Assembly (NCBI GenBank): GCA_002269645.1
Contig: NIVC01000344.1
Location: 1-64,000, forward strand
Direction: 5' to 3'
Source: Macrostomum lignano
Lineage: Eukaryota
Length of the DNA stretch: 64,000 nt
Shown: in pieces, positions 26,201 through 48,434 of the stretch
Position numbering within the stretch: position 1 is the stretch's first letter
How the letters are laid out: each line of letters begins with the position of its first letter
The notes under the pieces: model-generated
Told to the model about the DNA's origin: nothing
Seen by the model: only the letters and a program-made list of their open reading frames with translations
The model's database searches: none
Program-made: the position numbers and the translations under genes

Positions 26201-26838
26201 ATAGATCATGGACTATGGGTCATATGCTCTGGGCCATAGACTCCTCGGCCATTGACTATTGGTCATGGAATCTGGGTCATATGCTCTGGGCCATAGACTC
26301 CTGGGCCATTGACTATTGGTCATGGACTCTGGGTCATATGCTCTGGGCCATAGACTCTGGGCAATGGACTCTAGGTCAAAGAATATAGGTCATGGACTAT
26401 GGGTCATATGCTCTGGGCAATGGACTCTGGGCAATGGACTCTAGGCCAAAGAATATAGGTCATGGACTTATGCTCTGGGCCATAGACTCCTGGGCCATAG
26501 ACTATCAGTCATCGGCTATGGGTCATATGCTCTGGGCCATAGACTGGGCCATGGACTCTGATATCCGGACCCTTGGAGCTTTTTTCTGCACTTTACTACA
26601 TCTCTATTAGTAGCGCTTCAACATGATTCGAATACAACGCGCCCATTTTAATTTTCTTACTTTCATTCGAGCAGACAATACAACGGCGCCGACCAGTTCA
26701 GTTGCCACGACAACCACTGTTGCGACTAGGAGCAACGCCAGCGCTAGCAGGGTGGCAAACTGGCTGACTACCGCACTGCCTCTGTTTCTGCTTTCTCTGC
26801 TACTGAAGCAGCAGTCAGCTTTGGTGTGGCAGCTCTAG
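5275..26838 (+). CDS. ADAM-family (M12B reprolysin) metalloprotease-disintegrin, 14 exons, ~785 aa, with one apparent frameshift and a GPI-signal-like C-terminus
   Basis: Exons with GT-AG boundaries and consistent phases: 5275-5371 (signal peptide [27 protein letters not shown]), 5886-6039, 6750-6922 (CFYQGNVE, 1 nt short), 8674-8959 (TCGV switch-like motif, furin-like [14 protein letters not shown]), 9760-9831, 9918-10102, 10879-10963 ([15 protein letters not shown]), 11215-11360 ([15 protein letters not shown]), 12062-12242 ([15 protein letters not shown]), 12701-12931 (disintegrin), 23170-23360 and 23813-24032 (Cys-rich), 24405-24576 (EGF-like), 26675-26838. The domain order is that of non-ADAM10/17-type ADAMs. 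Confidence 0.9.
5536..5874 (+). mobile_element. tRNA-derived SINE with CORE-like domain (copy 1)
   Basis: A box TGGTCTAGTGG and B box GGTTCGATTCC, then CCTTGAGCAAGACACT...CAGCTGTAAAATGGG resembling the MIR/CORE segment. Contains an internal ~30-bp duplication. Two further copies in the window. Confidence 0.8.
6100..6690. repeat. 17-bp minisatellite (TAGTCCCCGATGTCCTC) in ADAM intron 2
   Basis: Visible tandem copies. Confidence 0.9.
7370..8597. repeat. 20-bp minisatellite (TTTCTTGAACCAATGGAGGG), about 60 copies, ADAM intron 3
   Basis: Visible tandem copies. Confidence 0.95.
8988..9556. repeat. (TGTC)n microsatellite preceded by (GTCTTA)n
   Basis: Visible. A related tract occurs at 51341-51640. 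Confidence 0.95.
10243..10480. repeat. ~44-bp tandem repeat (AAGAAGCGTCATGT-based)
   Basis: Visible tandem copies. Confidence 0.8.
10563..10801 (+). mobile_element. Non-autonomous Helitron-like element containing TTAGGG repeats
   Basis: 3' end CTCCCCATCGGGGGCGCAGATTGCTAG|T (short hairpin, then CTAG before a T). Homologous end at 33950. TTAGGG-like units at 10628-10657. The 5' boundary is approximate. Confidence 0.5.
11215..11360 (+). CDS. ADAM exon 8: zinc-binding catalytic motif
   Basis: [48 protein letters not shown]: complete metzincin HExxHxxGxxH plus Met-turn. Confidence 0.95.
11573..11832 (-). mobile_element. tRNA-derived CORE-like SINE (copy 2)
   Basis: Reverse-complement match to 5536-5874, including both boxes and the 3' tail GTTGCACATCTG. 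Confidence 0.8.
12250..12650. repeat. Pyrimidine-rich ~14-bp repeat (CTCTTTGCCCTCCT) in ADAM intron 9
   Basis: Visible. Confidence 0.85.
12701..12931 (+). CDS. ADAM exon 10: disintegrin domain
   Basis: [73 protein letters not shown]. The loop reads xCD (RGICD), not RGD. Confidence 0.95.
12991..23045. repeat. 33-bp satellite array, about 305 near-identical copies, filling ADAM intron 10
   Basis: Unit CTATATAGTATCTCCATGGCTTGAATCATATAT. Variants seen only in edge copies (about 13061, 13094, 23029 onward). Confidence 0.98.
24078..24322. mobile_element. Degenerate hAT MITE with CT-rich interior, ADAM intron 12
   Basis: Left CAGGAGTCGACAAACT after GTCTAGAC; right AGTTTGCCGATAATG; TSD not matched. 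Confidence 0.5.
24700..24895. repeat. 20-bp tandem repeat (TAGTGGACAATTGGTGACTA)
   Basis: Visible. Confidence 0.85.
25130..26555. repeat. Higher-order minisatellite (57-bp unit built from ~10-bp GCCATAGACT-like subunits), last ADAM intron
   Basis: Visible. The 19-aa periodicity in ORF 25746-26204 gives the 57-bp unit. Confidence 0.9.
26675..26838 (+). CDS. ADAM terminal exon: Ser/Thr stalk plus short hydrophobic (GPI-signal-like) end
   Basis: Phase-1 acceptor TTTCATTCGAGCAG. Encodes [54 protein letters not shown], homologous to the last exon of mini-genes A-D. Confidence 0.8.
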
Positions 26839-28231
26839 CCAGAGCGACGCCGAAAGAAAACAGACAAGATAAATATTGTCCACGCATCCCGTTGATGTAT
26901 AAAATTTGCTTTTTATGCACCATTTTAATTTTTAACCCCGTTTGTAAAATGTACACTTGATATGGTTTTATATCTTTTTGCCAAAAATTCAATGATGTGA
27001 TACAAACTTTTCTGCGTTTGACATTACAAAAAACTATTGTGGCCTCCTTGCGAATTTTCGAACGATCTTTTATTTCATAAATATTGTTTTAGAAATTGTT
27101 TCTGAACATATCGTTGCTTGAGCAGAAGAAAATCTGCAAAAGATCATTTCAGCTGTGAAATTTTAAGTTGTCAGACATTCATTTCTGGTTTATTTTGCGC
27201 TGAAATTGGCGCCAATTTAAAATATAAATTCGGCATGCAGCCGATACCGTATATTTCTTGTCCGCCTTACAAAACGATATTTTGTTGTTTAACTTTCTTT
27301 CGAAACCATGCTGTACTGAAACTGGCTTTAGCAATTGCTGTTTGCAAAGTCAGCAATTGCTGACATCCGTCAACTGGATGCCAGCGGCTTCAACTGGCGC
27401 AGCAAAGTGGGTCCTGGCCCTCCGGCACACGCATGAGAAGTAACCTGGCTTCCCTCACTTTCGACAGGTGCCCTCAGGGCGCGGTAGTCGGTTGAATTTT
27501 GCCCACAACGCTGACAACGCTGAGATCGTAAGTTCCACGGCATTCTAAACCTTCAGGATTGAGGATTGTTGAGAGCATCAGCAGCAGAGATAGGTGCTGT
27601 GGTTCATGGTGACTTGTCGATCACCGATGCTCGGTAAAAAATTTGCTGACTGACAATTCCTGACTCACTTCACGCTCCAGCTAAGCCAATCGGTGCGAAA
27701 GGGGGCTTCACGAGGCGAAACTGCATCCCTAAATTTAAGGCAGACGAGCAATCCATGGTTTTATTCATCCATGGATGAGGCCTGAAGCGCTGAGCCTGAC
27801 TATAATACCATATTAATCTTGACATACTAAATAGCATAGCTACATAGTCCTGCCTGGTCAATAATATCACTTTGCAAACAGCAATTGCCAAACCCAGTTT
27901 CTGTACAGCATGGTTTCGAAAGAAAGTTCAACAGGAAAACATCGTTTTGTAAAGCGGTCAAGAAATATACGTTATCGGCTGTATTCCGAATTTATATTTT
28001 AAGTTGGCACCAATTTCAGCGCAAAATAAACCAGAAATGAATGTCTGACAAACTCAAAATGTTACAGCTGGAATGAGTTTTGCTGATTTTCTTCTGCTCA
28101 AGCAAAGATATTTTGATAAATAACTTACAATTAAAAACTTTCAAGTTACAAATAAATATGGCATATCCATCAAGTTTGTTTATTGACGGTAATTTCGGAC
28201 AATATCCTTCTTTGCGTTTCTCTTGCCTTGT

Positions 28232-46771: not shown

Positions 46772-47998
46772 ATGTCTGTCCGATGGCTGCTGCTTCTGAG
46801 CTGTCTTGCTGCAGCACTGCTCTGCAGCGAGGCGTGTTCATCTTCCAAGAAAAGTAAGTCAGGCCGACTGAACTCATATCTGCTGCGTGTCTACTCAACT
46901 CCAGTCATATACCCGTCTTGCACAGAGCCGCTCCAACTCCCCACATCCTACTTTCCGCCTGACCCAGTCCAAATCCCAATGCAATCGTATCCCTTGCTCT
47001 CCATTTATCCGATTTTCTTCCTCCCATCTTCCTGTCACCCCTGTCTCTCCAGGCCCTTATCCAGCCCTCTCCAGCCCTCTCCAGCCCTCTCGAGCCCACT
47101 CCAGCCCTCTCGAGCCCTCTCCAGGCCTCTCGAGCCCTCTCCAGCCCTCTCCAGGCCTCTTGAGCCCTCTCCAGCCCTCTCCAGGCCTCTCGAGCCCTCT
47201 TCAGCCCTCTCCAGCCTTCTTCACCCCTCTCCAGCCCCTCCAGCCAGATTCATATCTCTCTTGCAAGACTCAGCTCGCAACTCAAATTTCAGGCCAACCG
47301 AAACCCACACCTGCTCCGCCGCCTACTGCAGCTCCGGGGTCGAACCCTAGTGAGTGAATGTTTTTTTGTAATTTTTCTAAAGGCCAAAACCGTTTGTCCT
47401 GTAACAGTAGTGTCTTATGGTCGCACAGTCTCACTGTCTCGCTTTAGATAGAATGCCAACAGCAGAAGGAGTGAATTTGACCTAATTTAGGCAAATCAAA
47501 TACTTACTTCGCTGTTGGTCGCAATTCTGCTTATTTATCCTTCGACTGAACGATGCTAATCATTTTCTCGCGATTTCTGTGAAATAGTTTCAAAGCGTTT
47601 GGGTGATCAGATCAATCACCTATTCTGAGTGGGATTTGCTTCTAGTTCCGACAAAAATGTCAAAAGTACAGTTTCTGGCTGAAATGTAGAAGAACGAATA
47701 GAAATGCAACCGACATCGCTTTCTCATTTCTCGGTGGCCTCATGCTACTGCGCTCGGTATTCTCTGCTTGATCGTAAAATTTCACACGATTCGAATACAG
47801 CGCGCCCATTTGAATTTTCCTAATTTCACTCCAGCTGCAAATCTAGCACCGCCACCCAAAAATCCTCCCTGGAGACCCAAAGCCGAGACCAAGCACGCCA
47901 GCACTAGCAGGGTCGCAAACTGGCTGATCGCTGTACTGCCTCTGTTTCTGCTTTTTCAGCTACTGAAGCAGCAGTCAGCTTTGATGTGCCAGATTTAG
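46772..47998 (+). CDS. Mini-gene D: 100-aa paralog (3 exons)
   Basis: Exons 46772-46853, 47293-47349, 47835-47998. ...[79 protein letters not shown]. Confidence 0.75.
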
Positions 47999-48434
47999 AC
48001 AAGGCAAGAGAAACGCAAAGAAGGATAATATTGTCAGAGATTCCCGTCAATAAACAAACTTGATGGATATGCCATATTTGTTTGTAAATTTTTCAATTTT
48101 TAGCTCGTAATTGAGAGTTATTTACCAAAATATTTCTTTGCTTGAGCAGAAAAAAATCAGCAAAAATCATTCCAGCTGTGAAATTTTGAGTTGTCAGACA
48201 TTTATTTCTGGATTATTTTGCGCTGAAATTGGCGCCAATTTAAAATATAAATTCGGCATGCAGCCGATACCGTATATTTCTTGTCCGCCTTACAAAACGA
48301 TGTTTTCCTGTTCAACTTTCTTTCGAAACCATGCTGTACAGAAACTGGGTTTGGCAATTGCTGTTTGCAAAGTGATATTATTGACCAGGCAGGACTATGT
48401 AGCTATGCTATTTAGTCTATTTGTATGCCAAATA

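What the first reader, a model, noticed from the sequence alone, without database searches (positions are those of the whole stretch)
26675..48430. One exon-shuffled membrane-anchor cassette terminates five genes of two unrelated types
Seen: a phase-1 terminal exon (S.S[R/M][V/L]ANWL...LPLFLL..LLK.QSA), a related 3' UTR and a ~250-bp conserved downstream block follow the ADAM (block at 27120-27350) and genes A (27860-28105), B (32480-32725), C (43650-43890) and D (48140-48375). Every mini-gene junction and the ADAM EGF-exon donor are phase 1. Inference: a portable anchor plus 3'-regulatory module was captured by the ADAM, or the mini-genes arose around a detached ADAM 3' end. Either way a protease and small surface proteins would share sorting and 3' UTR control, suggesting a co-localised protease/substrate or protease/decoy system.
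Basis: partly seen in the sequence, partly recalled or inferred. Interest (0 to 1): 0.8.

Follow-up and report, generated by a model that had tools for sequence, protein, structure and literature searches.

The report
ADAM protease borrowed neighbours' membrane-anchor exon
In the flatworm Macrostomum lignano, an ADAM protease ends in the last exon of a neighbouring family of tiny proline-rich surface-protein genes instead of the usual transmembrane tail; this is a clean local case of exon shuffling, but nothing yet shows that protease and mini-proteins work together.

Summary
The window is Macrostomum lignano contig NIVC01000344.1, positions 1-64000. A 21.5-kb ADAM gene (5275-26838, +) and four ~100-aa mini-genes (A, B on the minus strand; C, D on the plus strand) all end in a homologous phase-1 terminal exon. 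Each exon is followed by a ~245-bp non-coding block that is 87-94% identical between copies. All splice junctions are GT-AG and phase 1.

RNA-seq-based public annotations already contain the ADAM-tail junction in two splice isoforms, so the exon is used. They also contain mini-genes A, C, D and, in a near-identical second contig, B.

A profile of the tail found only these two gene types among 1.84 billion representative proteins. It is therefore a local exon capture, not a widely portable cassette.

A paralogous M. lignano ADAM keeps the same phase-1 boundary, followed by stalk, 29-residue transmembrane and cytoplasmic exons. The most parsimonious direction is therefore mini-gene to ADAM.

The tail looks like a GPI-attachment signal rather than a transmembrane anchor, but no dedicated predictor was available.

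The block has no conserved ORF and no Rfam match, probably lies beyond the poly(A) site of A, C and D, and shows gene-conversion mosaicism. Its function and its genome-wide copy number are open. The protease/substrate idea is untested.

The parts
5275..26838 (+). ADAM gene (Mlig000885.g3, PAA85134). It encodes a signal peptide, a prodomain with cysteine switch KATCGVS and an RSRR site, a reprolysin domain with [12 protein letters not shown], then disintegrin, ADAM_CR and EGF-like domains and the captured tail. An intron holds the 10-kb 33-bp satellite at 12991-23058.
   Evidence: tblastn of P0127 maps 16 collinear segments; Pfam Reprolysin, Disintegrin and ADAM_CR; ORFs
24405..24642 (+). ADAM EGF-like exon with two alternative phase-1 donors: exon end 24576 (...NRLP|) or 24642 (+22 aa, [22 protein letters not shown]|)
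   Evidence: Sequence; both isoforms are present in public models P0126/P0127 versus P0123/P0128/P0130; phase check
25140..26560 (.). Minisatellite (57-70-bp units) filling most of the last ADAM intron; homology to the mini-gene introns begins just 3' of it
   Evidence: TRF; self-BLAST
26587..26674 (+). 3' end of the last ADAM intron, homologous to the last introns of the mini-genes (83-87% to A and D). This is the 5' limit of the captured segment. It carries a tandem acceptor GAGCAG.
26675..26838 (+). ADAM terminal exon: (D)[24 protein letters not shown] (Ser/Thr-rich stalk) followed by [29 protein letters not shown], a GPI-signal-like tail
   Evidence: identical to the C-terminus of P0126
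26839..27104 (+). Sequence between the ADAM stop codon and the block. It is closest to the gene B 3' UTR (local alignment: 123 matches, 80%). It has no canonical AATAAA; TATAAA lies at +62.
27105..27350 (+). ADAM copy of the conserved non-coding block. Homology to the mini-gene units ends at its 3' end, which is the 3' limit of the captured segment.
27826..29652 (-). Mini-gene A unit (Mlig012955.g3, PAA85135, 102 aa). Exons 29382-29301, 28826-28761, 28392-28235; block 28126-27869. It lies tail-to-tail with the ADAM.
   Evidence: exact protein in the public collection
32441..35115 (-). Mini-gene B unit (119 aa). Exons 35039-34958, 34260-34198, 33470-33417 (an extra, duplicated Pro-rich exon), 33059-32899; block 32735-32499.
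   Evidence: A 119-aa gene is annotated with the same start and stop limits in the second contig L001. In this contig the annotation gives a 67-aa product instead.
41938..43964 (+). Mini-gene C unit (Mlig033002.g2, PAA85137, 98 aa; an early TGA removes the last 3 residues). Exons 42190-42271, 42572-42637, 43362-43510; block 43639-43883.
   Evidence: P0125 is identical to the model
46379..48445 (+). Mini-gene D unit (100 aa). Exons 46772-46853, 47293-47349, 47835-47998; block 48129-48373.
   Evidence: a 100-aa gene is annotated at exactly 46772-47998

Best explanation
This is local exon capture (classical phase-1 exon shuffling) inside a rearrangement-prone gene cluster of Macrostomum lignano.

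The donor family. Tandem and inverted duplicates of a ~2-kb mini-gene each encode a signal peptide (MSVRWLLLLSCLAAALLC), a short fast-evolving proline-rich middle, and a C-terminal signal of the GPI-attachment type. That signal has small residues (ASxS), a short spacer (RVAN) and a 12-15-residue hydrophobic stretch with a central Pro, followed by KQQSAL...

The capture. A ~765-bp piece of one such unit came to lie behind the EGF-like exon of the adjacent ADAM gene. The piece comprises the last ~90 nt of the final intron, the terminal exon, the 3' flank and a 245-bp downstream block. Both the ADAM boundary and the mini-gene intron are phase 1, so splicing gives an in-frame fusion. The ADAM thereby lost its ancestral stalk, transmembrane and cytoplasmic exons.

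The result. An otherwise complete and apparently catalytically competent ADAM now carries a Ser/Thr-rich stalk and a GPI-type (or at least tail-less) anchor.

Status of each step:
- Shown: the homology, the phases, the use of the exon in annotated transcripts, and the restriction of the tail to these two gene types.
- Inferred: the polarity (about 0.7), GPI anchoring (about 0.65), and gene conversion and/or constraint keeping the anchor-coding 100 nt and the block about 90% alike while the flanks diverged.

The block is a conserved non-coding element of unknown role that travelled with the exon. It probably lies outside the mature mRNA of A, C and D.
For: Homology and phases:
- Five exon+block pairs and no solitary copies.
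- Gene models with GT-AG, phase-1 junctions throughout.
- Coding lengths of the terminal exons are 158/161/158/164/164 nt, all 2 mod 3, even though the 5' halves cannot be aligned.

Use of the exon:
- Profile search of the tail hit only P0122 (mini-protein) and P0123 (an 820-aa ADAM ending in this tail). The third hit is a tandem-repeat artefact.
- ADAM models from three Mlig_3_7 contigs and from ML2 carry the junction in two isoforms; P0126 equals the window sequence.
- The Mlig_3_7 annotation is built from RNA-seq and transcriptome assemblies (PMC5730564).
- A, C and D are annotated exactly as modelled, and B is annotated as 119 aa in the second contig.

Polarity. In the paralogue locus L002 the EGF exon ends in phase 1 at the homologous ...NLPAES| position. 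It is followed by a phase 1-1 Thr-rich stalk exon and an exon encoding a 29-residue TM, then RRND and about 130 aa. L002 has no anchor exon, block or mini-gene.

Breakpoints. Homology starts in the intron at about 26587 and stops at the block end, 27350.

GPI type:
- Signal peptides are present and the AS residues are invariant.
- The longest apolar run is 12-15 residues, against 29 in the paralogue TM.
- Maximum Kyte-Doolittle 19-residue score is 1.52 (ADAM) and 1.86-2.14 (mini-genes), against 3.13 for the paralogue TM.
- Gene C loses its last 3 residues yet is still annotated and expressed.

Rearrangement context. Relics of ADAM 5' exons sit among the mini-genes at 44444-44620 and 51137-51779.
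Against: - I did not see reads, only transcript-derived protein models. A read-through or chimeric assembly is not formally excluded.
- In the anchor, pN is about equal to pS (0.10-0.16) between the ADAM and the mini-genes. There is therefore no codon-level signal of purifying selection on the ADAM copy. Conservation is at nucleotide level, which fits gene conversion as well as function.
- The sequence tree cannot polarise the event. The ADAM 3' flank is closest to B, while its intron end is closest to A and D.
- No relic of a TM or cytoplasmic exon was found in the window.
- The paralogue's TM exons are unannotated and its annotated model is frameshifted.
- GPI status rests on heuristics only. 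The KQQSALxxQx end after the hydrophobic stretch is atypical, and a short TM anchor with a 10-residue tail remains possible.
Confidence: 0.7

Rival explanations
1. Reverse polarity. The tail evolved first in the ADAM. A duplicated, detached ADAM 3' end then acquired a promoter, a signal-peptide exon and Pro-rich exons, founding the mini-gene family.
For: The unrooted tree is compatible with the ADAM copy as outgroup. The ADAM anchor has the most private substitutions, 8 of 101 nt. ADAM fragments are scattered through the array, so pieces of the ADAM have been duplicated here.
Against: This route needs de novo origin of a GPI-type tail in the ADAM and also of a whole new gene around it. The paralogue keeps the canonical TM and cytoplasmic tail behind the same phase-1 boundary. 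The scattered ADAM relics are 5' exons, not 3' ends.
Confidence: 0.2
2. The ADAM-side copy is only the decayed 3' remnant of a fifth mini-gene. The annotated junction would then be a read-through or assembly artefact, and the real ADAM product would be secreted or end elsewhere.
For: pN is about equal to pS in the anchor. No canonical AATAAA follows the ADAM copy. If neither donor is used, read-through of the EGF exon reaches a stop codon after 35 further codons (...LPGVAIDC...SNYLE*).
Against: The junction appears in two isoforms, in models on three Mlig_3_7 contigs and in the ML2-derived UniRef models. The ORF, its frame and its acceptor are intact although the 5' half has diverged beyond alignment. 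That 5' half is Ser/Thr-rich, like a stalk. No other plus-strand exon exists before gene A.
Confidence: 0.07
3. The shared tail is a short type-I transmembrane anchor with a 10-residue cytoplasmic stub (KQQSALMCQI), not a GPI signal.
For: A Lys follows the hydrophobic stretch, as at many TM ends. The mini-gene tails exceed the Kyte-Doolittle 1.6 threshold, at 1.86-2.14. About 10 residues follow the hydrophobic core.
Against: The apolar run is only 12-15 residues with a central Pro. The ADAM tail scores 1.52. Small residues are conserved at the position where a GPI attachment site would sit, 5-6 residues upstream. Gene C loses its last 3 residues without apparent harm. From memory, Thy-1 is a GPI protein that also has polar residues after its hydrophobic stretch.
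Confidence: 0.3
4. The 245-bp block is (or derives from) a mobile element such as a MITE or SINE, and has nothing to do with regulating these genes.
For: It is non-coding, sharply bounded and more alike between copies than its flanks. More than half of the M. lignano genome is repetitive. Its ends are weakly inverted (CTTTGC...GCAAAG).
Against: All 5 copies in the window and all 3 in L001 sit at the same place relative to an anchor exon. No solitary copy occurs in about 80 kb of independent sequence (window plus L002). No clear terminal inverted repeats or target-site duplications were seen. In the mini-genes, homology continues about 70 nt beyond the block.
Confidence: 0.25
5. One reading: protease and mini-proteins form a co-sorted, co-regulated protease/substrate or protease/decoy system.
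For: They have the same predicted anchor type and the same downstream block, and they are physically clustered. The ADAM copy in this window is classed as testis region, and all three copies as germline-enriched. From memory, mammalian sperm ADAM3 maturation depends on GPI-anchored TEX101/LY6K.
Against: There are no expression data for the mini-genes, because the stored tables are cut before their IDs. The UTRs are not conserved, and the block probably lies outside the mRNA. Sharing an anchor follows from the capture alone.
Confidence: 0.1

Closest known systems
Canonical membrane ADAMs (closest named hits are ADAM9/12-like; M12B adamalysins)
   Same: Signal peptide, prodomain with cysteine switch and furin-type site, reprolysin domain with HExxHxxGxxHD and Met-turn, disintegrin, cysteine-rich and EGF-like domains. 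The copy in this window is classed as testis region and all three copies as germline-enriched, as many vertebrate ADAMs are.
   Different: There is no transmembrane helix and no cytoplasmic tail, so no SH3-binding or phosphorylation sites. A 54-residue stalk plus a GPI-type signal of foreign origin takes their place.
GPI-anchored metzincins MT4-MMP (MMP17) and MT6-MMP (MMP25) (from established knowledge)
   Same: A zinc metalloprotease held at the cell surface by a C-terminal GPI signal instead of the TM and cytoplasmic tail that its relatives have.
   Different: These belong to a different protease family (matrixins). No exon shared with neighbouring genes is known for them. GPI anchoring of the flatworm ADAM is predicted, not shown.
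Genes with a dedicated GPI-signal terminal exon, e.g. NCAM-120 versus NCAM-140/180, or Drosophila FasII isoforms (established knowledge; FasII GPI isoform mentioned in PMC12847815)
   Same: The GPI signal is a self-contained 3' exon that can replace TM-encoding exons.
   Different: In those genes the choice is made by alternative splicing within one gene. Here the exon was acquired from a neighbouring gene family and is the only terminal exon.
Phase-1 exon shuffling of extracellular modules (Patthy's rule; established knowledge)
   Same: Donor and recipient introns are phase 1, the breakpoints lie in introns, and the internal mini-gene exons are symmetrical 1-1. One of them is duplicated in gene B.
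   Different: What moved is a terminal sorting-signal exon with its 3' flank, not a folded domain. The event is local and recent enough that intron homology survives.
Very small GPI-anchored peptides (CD52, CD24; plant arabinogalactan peptides) (established knowledge)
   Same: Signal peptide, a mature part of about 50 residues or less rich in Pro/Ser/Thr, and a GPI signal. They evolve fast.
   Different: No sequence homology (no significant Pfam hit). This is an analogy only.

Membership tests
ADAM (M12B adamalysin) family | Reprolysin catalytic domain with the zinc motif HExxHxxGxxHD | tested here: met
   PF01421 at E=4.9e-42; [12 protein letters not shown] at 11146-11361
ADAM (M12B adamalysin) family | Disintegrin and ADAM cysteine-rich domains followed by an EGF-like module | tested here: met
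   PF00200 at 4.2e-21 and PF08516 at 1.2e-12; EGF-like exon 24405-24576 by sequence
ADAM (M12B adamalysin) family | Prodomain with cysteine switch | tested here: met
   KATCGVS and RSRR in the exon at 8672-8959. The Pfam propeptide model itself did not score.
ADAM (M12B adamalysin) family | Single transmembrane helix plus cytoplasmic tail | tested here: not met
   The C-terminus is the captured 54-residue exon. Maximum KD19 is 1.52 and the longest apolar run is 15 residues, against 29 in the paralogue. The gene remains an ADAM by its ectodomain, but it is an atypical, tail-less one.
GPI-anchored proteins | N-terminal ER signal peptide | tested here: met
   By inspection only: [27 protein letters not shown] (ADAM) and MSVRWLLLLSCLAAALLC (mini-genes). 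No predictor was run.
GPI-anchored proteins | C-terminal signal: small residues at the attachment site and two positions after it, a 5-10-residue spacer, a hydrophobic stretch of about 10-20 residues near the C-terminus, and no long cytoplasmic tail | tested here: inconclusive
   The pattern AS-x-[SN]-[RM]-[VL]-AN-W + L(I/T)(A/T)(V/A)LPLFLL fits heuristically. The 10 residues after the hydrophobic core are atypical, and NetGPI, PredGPI and big-PI were not available.
GPI-anchored proteins | Release by PI-PLC or direct demonstration of the lipid anchor | not testable with these tools
   Requires an experiment
Exon shuffling / exon capture | Homologous exon in otherwise unrelated genes, with intron-phase compatibility and homology reaching into the flanking intron | tested here: met
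Exon shuffling / exon capture | The exon is expressed as part of the recipient gene | tested here: met
   Transcript-based public models carry the junction. I did not inspect raw reads.
Transposable element (for the 245-bp block) | Terminal inverted repeats or target-site duplications, and many dispersed solitary copies | tested here: inconclusive
   No clear terminal inverted repeats or target-site duplications. There are 8 of 8 copies attached to anchor exons and 0 solitary copies in about 80 kb. The genome-wide count is not testable here.
Structured or known non-coding RNA (for the block) | Match to an RNA family, or covariation supporting a fold | tested here: not met
   No Rfam match above noise. 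Folding z-scores are -1.9 and -2.8, with 0 compensatory pairs among 61.

The most novel reading that the evidence does not exclude
The anchor-coding 100 nt and the 245-bp downstream block together form a cis-acting unit, kept alike by selection rather than only by gene conversion. The unit would give the testis/germline ADAM and the Pro-rich GPI peptides a common 3'-end or enhancer control and a common membrane microdomain. The cluster would then be a functional protease-partner module, with the mini-proteins as substrates, decoys or chaperones, as TEX101/LY6K are for sperm ADAM3.
Probability: 0.1. Interest if true: 0.65.

Novelty: new variant of a known kind. Interest (0 to 1): 0.4.

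Why it matters
- It is an unusually legible natural example of exon shuffling. Donor family, recipient gene, intron breakpoints, phase compatibility and transcript use are all visible within 25 kb, and a paralogue still shows the ancestral state.
- It predicts an ADAM with no cytoplasmic tail and probably a GPI anchor. My two literature searches on this point found no described natural GPI-anchored ADAM. ADAM tails normally carry trafficking and signalling inputs, so this protease would have to be regulated differently.
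- M. lignano is transgenic-tractable and has RNAi, so the predictions are testable.
- It does not open or settle a long-standing question, and the genes themselves are already in public annotation as hypothetical proteins.

Tried and rejected
- **The repeat finder on 20-55 kb** was swamped by the 33-bp satellite, so I used scripted BLAST instead.
- **Word-indexed protein search with the tail profile** found nothing. The exhaustive representative search did find hits.
- **The look-up of encoding contigs** refuses spliced models. I reached the loci through returned protein ids instead.
- **Block as protein-coding:** rejected. The ORF is broken by indels in A and C, the ATG is lost in A and there is a stop in B.
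- **Block as known RNA or tRNA:** rejected.
- **Block as structured RNA:** no support.
- **Polarising the event from trees or distances** failed, because the similarity is mosaic.
- **The B-intron 'seed' of the ADAM minisatellite** is only a 20-nt match (E=0.003), too weak to use.
- **Search for a relic of the ancestral TM/cytoplasmic exon** in the window and in L001: nothing.
- **Expression of the mini-genes:** the IDs appear in no paper text, and five supplement sets gave nothing usable. The hit for Mlig012955 is an unrelated g1 gene (EEF1G). The tables of PMC7336406 are cut before the mini-gene IDs.
- **Literature search for GPI-anchored ADAMs** gave only a loose review sentence and an engineered construct.

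Full report
**What the window is.**
- The best ADAM matches pointed to Macrostomum lignano.
- Exact protein look-ups and locus retrieval then showed that the window is positions 1-64000 of contig NIVC01000344.1 of assembly GCA_002269645.1 (Mlig_3_7).
- The region is rich in tandem repeats. They include a near-perfect (99% matches) 10-kb array of a 33-bp unit inside an ADAM intron.

**The observation.**
- Self-BLAST shows exactly five copies of a terminal-exon module, each paired with a ~245-bp downstream block. Neither occurs alone.
- I built gene models from an alignment of the units and from the sequence itself.
- The four mini-genes are A and B on the minus strand and C and D on the plus strand. 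Each has an 82-nt first exon encoding MSVRWLLLLSCLAA(A/T)LLC..., one or two short Pro-rich exons (66/63+54/66/57 nt), and a terminal exon. All junctions are GT-AG and phase 1.
- The ADAM (5275-26838) has an EGF-like exon with two phase-1 donors, ending at 24576 and at 24642.
  - Only the 3' ~100 nt of the exon is conserved between lineages (84-97%), while its 5' half is unalignable.
  - The 3' UTRs are similar only within A/C/D, and weakly between the ADAM and B.
  - About 60-90 nt of the upstream intron is also homologous.

**Is the exon really part of the ADAM?**
- A profile of the five tails was searched against 1.84 billion representative proteins. It returned two real hits.
  - One is a 98-aa M. 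lignano protein that matches my gene C model. Its cluster member P0125 is identical to that model.
  - The other is an 820-aa M. lignano ADAM ending in ...[54 protein letters not shown].
- Cluster mates from three Mlig_3_7 contigs, plus UniRef entries without an NCBI accession (which I take to come from the older ML2 annotation), carry the same junction in two isoforms...NRLP|DNTT... and ...[10 protein letters not shown]...KSIE|DNTT.... One of them (PAA85134) is identical to the window sequence.
- The Mlig_3_7 annotation was derived from RNA-seq, a de novo transcriptome and TransDecoder (PMC5730564).
- Gene A is annotated exactly as I modelled it. D is annotated as 100 aa at exactly my coordinates. 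B is annotated as 119 aa with the same start and stop limits in a 97%-identical second contig, L001.

**How widespread is it?**
- At the protein level the tail occurs only in this ADAM and this mini-gene family, which are neighbours in all three contigs.
- It is a local event, not a dispersed cassette. Unannotated copies elsewhere in the genome could not be searched.

**Polarity.**
- Trees do not help. The ADAM copy resembles B in the 3' flank and A/D in the intron end, and the informative sites in the block conflict (ADAM+C three times, A+B twice).
- Comparative anatomy does help. In the locus of the paralogue Mlig009465.g3 (L002), the EGF exon ends in phase 1 at the homologous position. The correct frame reads ...PPDCVAVGYGGSITNLPAES|, against ...[18 protein letters not shown]| here.
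- That boundary is followed by an unannotated phase 1-1 Thr-rich stalk exon. Next comes an exon encoding a 29-residue transmembrane segment, RRND and about 130 further residues.
- L002 has no anchor exon, block or mini-gene.
- ADAMs in general have a TM and a cytoplasmic tail. The GPI-type tail is therefore most parsimoniously derived, and the ADAM is the recipient.
- Relics of ADAM 5' exons lie between C and D and beyond D. This shows that the cluster has been repeatedly rearranged, which supplies a mechanism: duplication or deletion with breakpoints in phase-1 introns.
- The captured segment runs from about 26587 (intron) to 27350 (block end), after which homology stops abruptly.

**What the tail is.**
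- Both protein types have N-terminal signal peptides.
- The tail has invariant small residues (A-S-x-S/N), a short spacer, and a hydrophobic stretch of only 12-15 residues with a central proline, then KQQSAL....
- The maximum Kyte-Doolittle 19-residue score is 1.52 for the ADAM tail and 1.86-2.14 for the mini-genes. The paralogue's true TM scores 3.13.
- Gene C carries a premature TGA that removes the last three residues, yet it is annotated in all three contigs.
- This fits a cleaved GPI-attachment signal better than a transmembrane anchor. I could not run a dedicated predictor, so I give it about 0.65.
- The ADAM ectodomain looks catalytically competent: cysteine switch, RSRR site, [12 protein letters not shown] and CIM Met-turn.

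**Conservation pattern.**
- Between the three lineages (ADAM, B, and A/C/D) the variable exon half and the UTR are near saturation. The anchor-coding part and the block stay at about 85-94%.
- In the anchor, pN is about equal to pS (0.10-0.16). The similarity is therefore at nucleotide level, not visibly codon-driven.
- Together with the conflicting site patterns, this indicates ectopic gene conversion, possibly on top of constraint.
- Coding constraint is nevertheless visible in the frame-preserving lengths of all five terminal exons and of all internal exons.

**The block.**
- It has no conserved ORF and no Rfam or tRNA match.
- Its folding z-scores are modest and no covariation supports a fold.
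- It contains a 16-nt palindrome, AAATTGGCGCCAATTT, in three of the five copies.
- In A, C and D a canonical AATAAA lies 53-59 nt after the stop codon, while the block starts at +111 to +133. The block is therefore probably downstream of the poly(A) site. This weakens the 'shared 3' UTR control' reading.
- All eight copies seen sit next to an anchor exon. No solitary copy occurs in about 80 kb of independent sequence. This is only a weak bound against a transposable-element origin.

**Function.**
- In the re-annotated positional and FACS data sets of Brand et al. 2020 (PMC7336406, Table S6), the window's ADAM copy (Mlig000885.g3) is classed as testis region and germline-enriched. The copies on the other two contigs are germline-enriched but 'non-specific' by position.
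- The mini-gene IDs lie beyond the stored part of those tables, and no paper names them. Co-expression, and with it the protease/substrate idea, is untested.

**Verdict.** The finding is real and correctly located, and I interpret it as a local phase-1 exon capture. The capture turned a canonical ADAM into a tail-less, probably GPI-anchored one. This is a new variant of known kinds (exon shuffling; GPI-anchored metzincins) and is of moderate interest. The functional-system reading is speculative.

Noticed in passing
window 12991-23058: A near-perfect 33-bp tandem array (305 copies, 99% matches) fills an ADAM intron. In the second contig L001 the whole ADAM gene spans only 10.3 kb, against 21.5 kb here, so the array length differs greatly between copies or the array is collapsed in one assembly.
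   Followed up: partly
window 44444-44620, 51137-51316 and 51708-51779 (+): Relics of ADAM 5' exons lie between mini-genes C and D and beyond D: residues 71-127 at 69% identity, and residues 164-223 at 88% together with the same (TGTC)n repeat. Pieces of the ADAM have been duplicated into the array.
   Followed up: partly
window 40819-40869 (+): An isolated 51-nt fragment of mini-gene exon 1 (94% to D, covering 12 nt of the 5' UTR and 13 codons) lies about 1.1 kb upstream of unit C. It is probably the remnant of a further copy.
   Followed up: no
window 24577-24642: Alternative 5' splice sites in the ADAM EGF exon add 22 residues ([22 protein letters not shown]) in some annotated isoforms. Both sites are phase 1.
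   Followed up: yes
window 33044-35028 (-) versus L001 26407-28632: Gene B is annotated as a 67-aa product in another frame on this contig but as 119 aa on the 97%-identical contig. Yet exons 1-3 are identical between the two contigs, the terminal exon is 97.5% identical, and the 119-aa ORF is intact here.
   Followed up: partly
L002 4540-6800 (NIVC01003193.1): The annotated model of the paralogous ADAM Mlig009465.g3 is frameshifted in the EGF exon. It also misses a stalk exon (6157-6231) and a TM/cytoplasmic exon (from 6318). The cause could be an assembly indel or a pseudogene.
   Followed up: partly
window 29791-32285 (-) and 36759-37010 (+): Retrotransposon gag- and protease-like ORFs lie between genes A and B. 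A THAP-like ORF (MPRKCSVIFCCANYN...) lies between B and C.
   Followed up: no
window 11572-11827, 5537-5875 (inverted) and 41342-41573: A ~250-bp element occurs three times (81-89% identity). One copy gives an Rfam tRNA match (35.7 bits at 11759-11828, minus strand), but ARAGORN calls no tRNA. It is possibly a tRNA-derived SINE.
   Followed up: no
window 27349-27364 and 27203-27218 / 32631-32646 / 48226-48241: A perfect 16-nt palindrome, GTCAGCAATTGCTGAC, sits exactly where the ADAM block's homology ends. A second 16-nt palindrome, AAATTGGCGCCAATTT (two inverted CCAAT motifs), lies inside the block of the ADAM, B and D. It is degenerate in A and C.
   Followed up: partly
window 52333-55032 (-): ORFs resembling the C-terminal part of a rhodopsin-type GPCR (NPxxY-like ...[13 protein letters not shown]...) lie downstream of the cluster.
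   Followed up: no
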